A DNA stretch of 64,000 nt, from IMG/VR virus record IMGVR_UViG_3300035180_001778, positions 286,470 to 350,469 of that record; one strand, given 5' to 3'. The notes below the pieces were generated by a model. It was not told the DNA's origin, ran no database searches, and saw nothing but the letters and a program-made list of their open reading frames with translations. Position numbers and translations under genes: made by a program. This document shows, one piece after another, positions 9,597-10,560 of this stretch. The number at the start of each line of letters is the position of its first letter. Positions within the stretch are counted from its first letter, which is position 1.

Positions 9597-10560
9597 CTAG
9601 AAGCTCTCGTCGAGGTATTCCCACCACGACTTACGAGGAAGCTGGGGGCCCGAACAAGGGATCCACTTCTCATGGAGATCGCGGCCTTGAATGGTGATCC
9701 CTCGTCTGCTCGTGACCCACATGTTCCAATGTCGAACGATGGCCCGAGTCCCCTCCCAAACGGAAGCTACTTGAGCGTAGATCCGCTCCCTGTTCTTGTC
9801 CCGGCGGAAAGCCCACACCCCAGGCTTGCACCACTCGGGGATAGGGAGAGGCGGCTTCGGGACATGAATGAGAGGATGCCCACCCTCACGAACGAAGGAG
9901 ATGTCGCGGAAGTTGATCTCGTCGTCGTAGTAGACCGCGTGCTCGGTTCGGCCTCGAATACGCAGTTCGGATCCCACACTTGTAGCAAGCTCACGGGAAA
10001 AGATCGGGAGCGCCCCATTGGGCAACTGCTCAACCTGGAAGATGCGTCGAGCAATCCCCTGATAGTCACGCGCTCGGAAGATGGGCGCGGCCATCGATCT
10101 GGCTAGGCTACTTCGCCCCTCTGCCGAGTTCATGAAGTTGGAGATGATGCTCTCTCGAAGGGACTGATGTAGTTGGGTTCCCACCGCAACAGCGCTGTCC
10201 GAGAGCATCCGGAATGGGACTGTGCATCCCATCGAGAGACTTCGAGCCGCTGTCTCGAAGTCCATAGCTATCAGCGACACAATTCCCGGAGGCATATCGG
10301 GAACACGGATCGGAGCTGGGGGATTCCCTCGGCGGTAGGCCCCGTTGTTCGTTCCGGGCCCGAATTCTTCGAGGGTGCTGAGAAGGTTCCGGTCTTTGGG
10401 CCCCGCTTCACTCCAGAAGTAGACCTTGGCACGGAAGAGGTTCGCCGAAGGCTTCAGGTTGTCGACTCGCCGGGTGTTTGGATCCAGGCGGAGAGAAGCG
10501 ACCCCGTCTTGAAATGGAACGCGACTTCCGGGGGCAGCTCAGATCCCACACCAAAGGCAT
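9597..10560 (-). CDS. hypothetical protein with capsid-N-terminus-like segment; apparent +1 frameshift at G5 run 10530-10534
   Basis: GGTGTA-N9-ATG at 10560. Removing one base joins it to ORF 9597-10295. Ends KSWWEYLDESF. Confidence 0.65.

What the first reader, a model, noticed from the sequence alone, without database searches (positions are those of the whole stretch)
9990..10160. Major-capsid N-terminus-like segment inside a non-structural W-tail protein
Seen: ESIISNFMNSAEGRSSLARSMAAPIFRARDYQGIARRIFQVEQLPNGALPIF. From memory this resembles the N-arm of HK97-fold capsids of some large phages (GR..LA.SM..P…RDY..V.R..F.VEQLP.GALP.Y). The rest of the ~320-aa protein is unrelated and ends in an SH3-like region and the W-tail. 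Inference: a capsid-docking module that lets cargo co-assemble, or a dominant-negative decoy against related phages.
Basis: inference. Interest (0 to 1): 0.6.

Follow-up and report, generated by a model that had tools for sequence, protein, structure and literature searches.

The report
Capsid fragment in accessory megaphage protein
A gene far from the head genes of a 350-kb phage holds a true copy of the first ~65 residues of that phage's own major capsid protein. It belongs to an undescribed megaphage protein family built around this fragment; its job is unknown, and docking onto the capsid-assembly machinery is my best guess.

Summary
Residues 38-100 of the ORF at window 9597-10295 (minus strand) are homologous to residues 1-65 of this phage's own major capsid protein (MCP). 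That MCP is a phage G gp27-type HK97-fold protein encoded 105 kb away. Support: 42% identity, BLASTP E 3e-17; profile-profile probability 99.8%.

The gene belongs to a metagenome-only family of at least 50 members with no Pfam or PHROG entry of its own. Members have four parts:
- a ferredoxin-like N-domain;
- the MCP N-terminal module (some relatives also keep MCP C-terminal P-domain strands, so the module is an internally deleted MCP);
- a Tudor/SH3-like barrel;
- an acidic Trp/Phe tail.

The family is accessory: 4 of 11 related megaphage records carry it, always 105-210 kb from the head genes. Its MCP piece groups with other family members, not with the host phage's MCP, so the capture is old.

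In this phage an 11-bp deletion puts the ancestral start out of frame. The likely product is 232 aa without the N-domain.

Function is inferred only. Most likely the fragment is a homotypic capsid-interface module. Rivals are a decoy for capsid-sensing immunity, an assembly poison, or decay. A complex prediction gave no verdict.

The parts
9597..10295 (-). ORF of 232 aa from the first ATG (stop at 9597-9599). This is the likely product in this phage.
   Evidence: A Logan assembly calls a 222-aa version from the next ATG at 10265 (P0002).
10296..10538 (-). 81 in-frame codons upstream with no start codon. They encode the family's ferredoxin-like N-domain and the start of the linker.
   Evidence: Nearly identical protein in relative P0003. 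Against L007 the N-domain codons 10330-10535 show 9 synonymous and 2 non-synonymous differences.
10408..10560 (-). 50-aa ORF. Its first 15 codons are the ancestral family N-terminus (MPLVWDLSCP...); after the deletion it runs out of frame.
10519..10520 (-). Junction of an 11-bp deletion relative to L007. It separates the ancestral ATG (10560) from the main frame. A C-run (10530-10534) followed by CGG lies just upstream.
   Evidence: The same deletion is present in L008 (99.9% identical) and L012 (100% identical).
9996..10184 (-). MCP N-terminus-like module (protein residues 38-100): two N-arm helices plus the first P-domain strand and the LP.GALP loop.
9894..9971 (-). Vestige of MCP C-terminal P-domain strands (residues 109-134).
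   Evidence: Weak colinear match, E 0.92. Aligned to the clear block in P0004-P0008.
9654..9842 (-). Tudor/SH3-like five-stranded barrel (residues 152-214).
   Evidence: AF2 pLDDT above 90. VIA-align best match a Tudor domain: Z 7.2, rmsd 2.5, 59 residues aligned. Foldseek hits are weak only.
9600..9653 (-). C-terminal 'W-tail' (P..KSWWEYLDESF), a short acidic Trp motif.
   Evidence: Family hallmark. Six frames of the genome carry it against 0.8 expected.
10956..10985 (-). Sigma-70-like promoter match upstream of the 122-aa gene that precedes the target. It may drive the 122-aa gene, the target and the RlaP gene as one unit.
   Evidence: 9 of 12 positions; 1 site found against 0.5 expected, so weak

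Best explanation
The segment is an exapted piece of a capsid gene.

Shown:
- An ancestral copy of a phage G-type HK97-fold MCP lost its E-loop, spine helix and A-domain. It became fixed between a ferredoxin-like N-domain and a Tudor/SH3-like domain with an acidic Trp tail. This founded an accessory protein family found only in megaphage and metagenome sequences.
- The part every member keeps is the N-arm helices plus the first P-domain strand. The residues that are invariant in real MCPs are also conserved there.
- In this phage an 11-bp deletion has cut off the N-domain's start. The expected product is the 232-aa form, with the capsid-like module near its N-terminus.

Inferred:
- The kept module is the part of an HK97-fold protein that makes contacts in trans during assembly, with the scaffold and with neighbouring subunits.
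- It most likely works as a homotypic capsid-interface module. It would tether the protein to unassembled MCP, to the scaffold or to the procapsid.
- The Tudor-like domain and tail would then either be carried into the head or act on capsid protein before assembly.
For: - Homology to the phage's own MCP and to 6WKK.
- Internally deleted MCP in relatives: P0004 matches MCP 3-64 and 222-278. P0010 and P0016 keep the E-loop end and spine-helix start.
- The family: 252 hits at E up to 1e-3, shared architecture, no Pfam family, and only phrog_2522 in PHROGs, in 38 of 41 members.
- The MCP-like module holds the only invariant columns of the 41-member alignment A3 (R176, P185) and several near-invariant ones. 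The same positions are invariant or nearly so in MCPs.
- AF2 gives confident N- and C-domains, but the module is not packed against them (pTM 0.35 and 0.39). It is therefore free to bind in trans.
- Every record long enough to test that has a member also has the G-type MCP.
- From established knowledge of P22, 80alpha and HK97: the N-arm is the scaffold-binding and inter-subunit element of HK97-fold proteins.
Against: - No result shows binding. The MCP x module complex prediction gave no verdict.
- The gene lies 105-210 kb from the head module in every genome checked. Here it sits among nucleotide-metabolism and RNA-repair genes behind a sigma-70-like promoter match. That fits early, non-structural expression.
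- It is absent from 3 of 4 complete related genomes, so the capsid does not need it.
- The first P-domain strand normally pairs within its own subunit. It is unclear what it would pair with in minimal members.
- No cultured phage has a member, so no virion proteomics exists.
Confidence: 0.38

Rival explanations
1. Counter-defence decoy or shield. The capsid-derived module imitates, or covers, the part of the MCP that host immune sensors recognise. Infection would then not trigger MCP-sensing abortive-infection systems.
For: - Patchy, accessory distribution and fast-evolving flanking domains.
- Neighbours include RlaP here, and HAD_SAK_2, NADAR and a nucleoside deoxyribosyltransferase-like gene in a relative. 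These gene types are linked to RNA repair and biological conflict.
- The same genome has a second chimera: an Acb2/Tad1 hairpin domain (PF24729, E 7e-13) fused to two MCP A-domain pieces.
- MCPs are frequent immune triggers: Avs7/8/10 wrap the HK97 fold, while Lit and CapRel read short MCP motifs (bioRxiv 10.64898/2026.01.04.697583).
Against: - I found no precedent for a phage-encoded mimic of its own trigger.
- For CapRel- or Lit-type sensors a mimic should activate, not block.
- The Avs sensors described engage the A-domain, P-domain and E-loop, most of which this protein lacks.
- Neighbourhoods are not conserved across lineages.
Confidence: 0.2
2. Dominant-negative assembly poison. The truncated MCP caps growing capsomers or titrates scaffold. 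This would exclude co-infecting relatives or delay the phage's own head assembly.
For: Truncated subunits that keep an interface are classic poisons. The module keeps the MCP-invariant residues. The position and promoter match suggest early expression.
Against: MCP N-termini of G000, G004 and the 512-kb phage are almost identical, so self and non-self cannot be told apart. A poison would not need the conserved N-domain, Tudor-like domain and tail.
Confidence: 0.1
3. A soluble copy of a cargo-peptide site. By analogy with encapsulins, the N-helix plus P-domain strands would form the pocket that binds C-terminal targeting peptides. The module would bind the W-tails carried by several proteins of this phage, including its own, as an adaptor or regulator.
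For: - The kept MCP parts (N-terminal helices and P-domain strands) are those that form the cargo-peptide pocket in Thermotoga encapsulin (from knowledge).
- phrog_2522 also rings the T. maritima control genome.
- Six proteins of G000 share the tail against 0.8 expected.
- G004, which has a family member, has two further tail proteins. G002, without a member, has none above background.
Against: The tail does not resemble known encapsulin targeting peptides. Only three genomes were compared. No binding was tested.
Confidence: 0.08
4. In this particular phage the gene is decaying. The 11-bp deletion inactivated it, and the open frame is a recent relic with no function.
For: The ancestral ATG is out of frame in three assemblies of this phage. 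The second MCP block is degenerate.
Against: - The remaining 313-codon frame has no stop.
- Two new ATGs (10295, 10265) have appeared in the linker where L007 has none.
- Synonymous changes are about as many as non-synonymous ones across the rest of the gene, and dominate in the N-domain (9 to 2).
- The family as a whole is clearly under selection.
Confidence: 0.1

Closest known systems
Phage G gp27-type major capsid protein (PDB 6WKK; phrog_2522; PF05065-like HK97 fold)
   Same: Residues 38-100 are homologous to MCP residues 1-65 and share the MCP-invariant residues. Relatives also keep MCP residues about 222-278.
   Different: There is no E-loop, spine helix or A-domain. It is flanked by unrelated domains, encoded far from the head module, and is an accessory gene. 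It cannot form a capsomer.
Specialised MCP paralogs such as T4 gp24 (vertex protein derived from gp23)
   Same: Arose from a copy of the capsid gene and was kept for a new role.
   Different: gp24 keeps the whole fold and is a lattice subunit. Here only an interface fragment survives, inside a chimera.
Capsid-targeting signals of packaged proteins (T4 internal proteins' CTS, P1 Dar proteins, encapsulin cargo-loading peptides)
   Same: The proposed logic is the same: a short module brings an otherwise unrelated protein to the assembling shell. Such cargo is accessory and fast-evolving.
   Different: Known signals are short peptides unrelated to the shell protein. Here the candidate signal is a piece of the shell protein itself. 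Packaging has not been shown.
SaPI1 CpmB / phage 80alpha scaffold mimicry
   Same: An accessory protein carries a copy of a capsid-assembly interface and uses it to engage the capsid protein.
   Different: CpmB copies the scaffold's C-terminus and belongs to a satellite. Here the copied element is the MCP's own N-arm, and the gene is in the phage.
Acb2/Tad1 anti-defence sponges
   Same: Another gene of the same genome fuses the Acb2/Tad1 hairpin domain to MCP A-domain pieces. This suggests capsid fragments are reused in conflict genes.
   Different: The target itself has no Acb2/Tad1 domain (Pfam: none) and no predicted nucleotide-binding pocket.

Membership tests
HK97-fold major capsid protein (phage G gp27 type, phrog_2522) | Similarity over the whole profile: N-arm, E-loop, P-domain, spine helix and A-domain | tested here: not met
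   Only profile positions 38-96 of 318 match. BLASTP covers MCP 1-76 plus a non-significant 251-269 block. AF2 shows no A-domain.
HK97-fold major capsid protein (phage G gp27 type, phrog_2522) | N-terminal arm region homologous to the family | tested here: met
   E 3e-17 to the own MCP; hhalign probability 99.8%; 6WKK residues 3-68 at E 1.8e-8.
HK97-fold major capsid protein (phage G gp27 type, phrog_2522) | Core gene in the head module, next to scaffold, decoration and portal genes, and present in all relatives | tested here: not met
   105 kb from the MCP in G000 and 166-210 kb away in G004, G006 and G007. Present in 4 of 11 records and in 1 of 4 complete ones.
New family described here (N-domain + MCP N-module + Tudor-like barrel + W-tail) | MCP N-module, C-terminal barrel and acidic Trp/Phe tail, in this order | tested here: met
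   Alignments A3, A6 and A8. Full-length homologs P0003-P0008, E 1e-19 to 1e-125.
New family described here (N-domain + MCP N-module + Tudor-like barrel + W-tail) | Ferredoxin-like N-domain starting Met-Pro..Trp, translated in frame | tested here: inconclusive
   The coding sequence is present and conserved, but its ATG is out of frame through an 11-bp deletion.
Packaged head proteins with a capsid-targeting signal (T4 IP type; encapsulin cargo) | Physical presence in procapsids or virions, and binding to scaffold or shell interior | not testable with these tools
   No cultured relative. The complex prediction gave no verdict.
Tudor/SH3-like small beta-barrels | Five-stranded barrel fold | tested here: inconclusive
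   AF2 pLDDT above 90. Best VIA match is a Tudor domain at Z 7.2, which lies in the range of common arrangements. Foldseek E is 0.05 or worse.
Acb2/Tad1 anti-defence proteins | Acb2/Tad1 hairpin domain (PF24729) | tested here: not met
   No Pfam hit in the target or in any of 41 family members. The domain is in a different gene of the genome.

The most novel reading that the evidence does not exclude
Megaphages of this group reuse pieces of their own capsid protein as a class of conflict or logistics modules. The target family carries the N-arm and P-domain piece. The Acb2/Tad1-hairpin protein carries two A-domain pieces. These fragments would either blunt host sensors that recognise the capsid protein, or, together with the shared W-tail, form an encapsulin-like system that addresses proteins to the head. 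Either reading would be a mechanism not described for phages.
Probability: 0.15. Interest if true: 0.85.

Novelty: new variant of a known kind. Interest (0 to 1): 0.6.

Why it matters
Capsid proteins are the most conserved and most often sensed proteins of tailed phages. A widespread accessory family that keeps only the capsid's N-terminal interface gives a concrete, testable handle on two open questions. The first is how giant phages address proteins to their heads. The second is how they cope with immunity that senses capsid protein. It also adds a family with no Pfam or PHROG entry, and it shows that capsid genes can be a source of new domains.

Tried and rejected
- Complex prediction of the own MCP with residues 25-115 of the target: score 0.01, no verdict. 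It is not evidence either way.
I did not try another route.
- Foldseek against PDB and BFVD: nothing at E up to 1e-3.
- ESM Atlas look-alikes: no usable hit.
- Pfam on ten N-domains at E up to 10: nothing. The idea that the invariant Met-Pro start marks a tautomerase-like enzyme has no support.
- The 'PN.NGD' linker motif of typical members first looked like a prohead-protease start. It has a counterpart in MCPs with short N-terminal extensions, so it is better read as part of the MCP-derived region.
- Gene-neighbourhood comparison across G000, G004, G006, G007 and the 512-kb contig found no conserved partner, apart from a DUF1653 gene in two closely related records.
- No family member was found in cultured phages or in GTDB genome contigs, where all 7 matches cover the MCP segment only.
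- The phage G capsid paper (PMC7316594) is not held. The structural role of gp27 residues 3-68 therefore rests on general HK97-fold knowledge.
- Recent copying from the phage's own MCP was considered and rejected. The segment's nearest rows in the tree are family members.

Full report
**What is at the coordinates.** The window is the last 64 kb (286470-350469) of a 350,469-bp IMG/VR virus record that CheckV rates 73% complete. GC content is about 60%. Downstream lies an RlaP-type nucleotidyltransferase (PF10127, phrog_388). Upstream lies a 122-aa ORF with no family match. A single sigma-70-like promoter match at 10985-10956 precedes that ORF (weak).

**The resemblance is homology.** These results agree:
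- P0001 residues 42-100 match phrog_2522 'major head protein' at E 5.9e-7.
- tblastn against cultured phages finds only capsid genes: phage G gp27 (39.7% identity, E 2e-9), Tunturi_5 MCP, and an unannotated 485-kb metagenomic phage.
- The phage's own MCP is at G000:C1:190490-191368 on the minus strand (293 aa). It matches the solved phage G capsid protein 6WKK over its full length at E 1.5e-62.
- P0001 residues 38-110 align with MCP residues 1-76 at 42% identity, E 3e-17. The genome search gave 44% identity and E 7e-14.
- A profile of the subfamily against a profile of 26 MCPs gives hhalign probability 99.8%, E 7.6e-28, over 64 columns.

**Gene model.** The stop-to-stop frame is 313 codons, but it has no ATG, GTG or TTG upstream of 10295.
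- A relative at 88% nucleotide identity (L007, JGI 3300020122) encodes a 326-aa protein (P0003) from an ATG that corresponds to window 10560.
- Relative to L007 the window has an 11-bp deletion with its junction at 10519/10520. The deletion puts that ATG out of frame.
- Two other assemblies carry the same deletion: L008 (Logan SRR11723145, 99.9% identical) and L012 (IMG/VR 3300035181_001045, 100% identical). It is therefore a real feature of this strain.
- The orphaned 68 N-domain codons differ from L007 by 9 synonymous and 2 non-synonymous codon changes. The rest of the gene shows roughly 1:1. Either the deletion is recent or the region is still translated.
- A +1 slip on the C-run before CGG (10528-10534) would restore the frame. 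This is only a possibility.
- The window has two ATGs in the divergent linker (10295, 10265) where L007 has none. I take the 232-aa product as the likely one.

**A family.** The word search found only P0002 and P0003. The exhaustive search with P0003 found 252 proteins at E up to 1e-3. Among the best 150, about 55 share one architecture:
- an N-domain of about 75 aa that starts Met-Pro..Trp;
- a disordered linker;
- the MCP N-terminal module of about 65 aa;
- a variable middle;
- a C-domain of about 65 aa;
- a tail of the form Trp/Phe, acidic, Arg, Leu, then acidic residues.

Pfam finds nothing in 41 members, and PHROGs finds only phrog_2522, in 38 of 41. A profile of 14 typical members hits 6WKK residues 4-88 at E 1e-23 and nothing else of note in the PDB.

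Relatives keep further MCP pieces. P0004 matches MCP 3-64 and also MCP 222-278 (44% identity, E 6e-11). P0010 and P0016 keep the end of the E-loop and the start of the spine helix. The module is therefore an internally deleted MCP, trimmed differently in different lineages, and only the N-terminal 65 residues are constant. In the target the second block is vestigial (E 0.92; aligned).

**Structure.**
- AF2 on P0003 with 41 sequences gives a confident beta-alpha-beta-beta-alpha N-domain (residues 1-70) and a five-stranded barrel with a helix (245-310). Both have pLDDT above 90.
- The MCP module appears as helices 126-178 at pLDDT 60-91, and linkers are disordered. Overall pTM is 0.35.
- P0004 behaves the same way. 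Its P-domain strands are present but at low confidence.
- VIA-align places the C-domain among Tudor, PWWP and SH3-like barrels. The best match is 8ye8_B at Z 7.2, rmsd 2.5, 59 residues aligned.
- It places the N-domain among ferredoxin-like alpha+beta folds at Z about 6. These scores lie within the range of common arrangements. Foldseek finds nothing significant.

**Evolution and distribution.**
- In a tree of 94 module sequences (66 columns, poorly resolved), 47 of 55 family members fall in one group (SH-aLRT 90). That group is separate from the group holding G000-type MCPs.
- The target's nearest rows are family members, not its own MCP.
- The MCP N-termini of G000, G004 and a 512-kb phage are almost identical, while their family members are only about 30% identical. 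The module is therefore old and evolves faster than the MCP.
- Members occur in G000, G004, G006 and G007 out of 11 megaphage records with this MCP, in 1 of 4 complete genomes, and in the 512-kb contig.
- They always lie 105-210 kb from the MCP.
- None was found in cultured phages or in GTDB genomes.
- Neighbours are mostly unknown and are not conserved.

**Related observations.** This genome holds two more genes with MCP pieces:
- A small ORF right after the MCP carries MCP residues 1-48. It is seen only in this lineage.
- A 302-aa protein carries an Acb2/Tad1 hairpin domain (PF24729, E 7e-13) followed by two MCP A-domain pieces.

The W-tail is shared by six frames of the genome against 0.8 expected. 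G004 has two further tail proteins and G002 has none above background. A DUF1653 gene sits next to a tail protein in three places.

**Mechanism.**
- Shown: homology, domain architecture, family membership, accessory status, and the start-codon lesion.
- Inferred: the module acts in trans. The argument has four steps. All members keep exactly the MCP's N-arm and first P-domain strand. They conserve the MCP-invariant residues. Minimal members lack the rest of the fold that those residues would contact. AF2 does not pack the module on the protein's own domains.
- In HK97-fold systems (P22, 80alpha, HK97; from knowledge) the N-arm binds the scaffold and neighbouring subunits. I therefore favour a homotypic capsid-interface module, at 0.38.
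- The position among early-type genes, the patchy distribution and the Acb2/Tad1 chimera keep a counter-defence decoy or shield alive (0.2). Known MCP sensors are described in bioRxiv 10.64898/2026.01.04.697583.
- Assembly poison, soluble tail receptor and decay are weaker.

**Comparison and novelty.** It is not an MCP: most of the fold, the genomic context and core-gene status all fail the membership test. It works, at most, like a capsid-targeting or interface-mimic module (T4 CTS, encapsulin cargo peptides, CpmB). It differs in being a piece of the shell protein itself. I found no description of such a family in the papers searched. I rate it a new variant of a known kind: an exapted capsid paralog.

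**Limits.**
- The complex prediction gave no verdict.
Later calls used the window only with local, family and alignment tools.
- No experiment or proteome bears on the family.

Noticed in passing
outside the window: G000:C1 about 175.7-176.6 kb (L003:1414-2322, minus strand): A 302-aa protein with an N-terminal Acb2/Tad1 hairpin domain (PF24729, E 7e-13, above the cut-off), followed by two tandem copies of an MCP A-domain fragment (phrog_2522 positions about 165-267). This is a second capsid-fragment chimera in the same phage.
   Followed up: partly
outside the window: G000:C1:190069-190461 (L001:1077-1424, minus strand): A small ORF directly downstream of the MCP begins with a copy of MCP residues 1-48, followed by a coiled-coil-like tail (phmmer E 5e-4 against the genome's ORFs). 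It is found only in this phage lineage. It may be a remnant of a tandem partial duplication.
   Followed up: partly
window 24308-24706 (-), 47152-47562 (+), 9600-9653 (-); also G000:C1 14639-15292, 28713-28961, 79944-80501: Six otherwise unrelated proteins end in the same short motif: Pro, 1-3 residues, Trp, acidic, Arg/Lys, Leu/Met, acidic run, hydrophobic end. Only 0.8 are expected by chance. It looks like a shared docking or targeting tail. None of these proteins has a Pfam or PHROG family.
   Followed up: partly
window 47564-48130 (+): A DUF1653 protein (PF07866, E 2.8e-8) lies directly after a W-tail protein. In two related megaphages (L013:7513-7980; L101:7638-8117, minus strand) a DUF1653 gene lies directly upstream of the family member. 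It is a possible partner of the tail; this was not tested.
   Followed up: partly
window 10519-10560 (-): An 11-bp deletion relative to a relative puts the ancestral start codon out of frame. The orphaned N-domain codons still look selected (9 synonymous, 2 non-synonymous changes). A C CCC CGG run at 10528-10534 could allow +1 slippage.
   Followed up: partly
window 8423-9577 (-): An RlaP-type 'RNA repair pathway' nucleotidyltransferase (PF10127 E 2e-21; phrog_388 E 5e-63) starts about 20 nt after the target's stop. It is probably co-transcribed. A short stretch of about 80 nt is 84-91% identical to nucleotidyltransferase genes of Cronobacter, Pectobacterium and Escherichia phages.
   Followed up: no
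window 11024-11239 (+): A 71-aa ORF on the opposite strand looks, from memory, like a HicA/YcfA-type toxin. No family scan was run on it.
   Followed up: no
family alignment A3/A4 (P0003-P0129): Met-Pro at the very N-terminus and a Trp two or three residues later are nearly invariant across members that are only 25-30% identical. An N-terminal proline of this kind is a hallmark of tautomerase-type enzymes, but Pfam and fold searches give no support.
   Followed up: partly
metagenomic proteins P0090, P0100, P0109, P0137, P0149: Some short metagenomic proteins carry a twin-arginine-signal-like start (RR.FL) in front of an MCP N-terminus-like segment. They may be fragments of another capsid class or another reuse of the module.
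   Followed up: no
control genomes: phrog_2522 also matches the Thermotoga maritima control genome. Presumably the match is to its encapsulin shell protein (from knowledge, not checked). That would fit a close relation between this capsid type and encapsulins.
   Followed up: no
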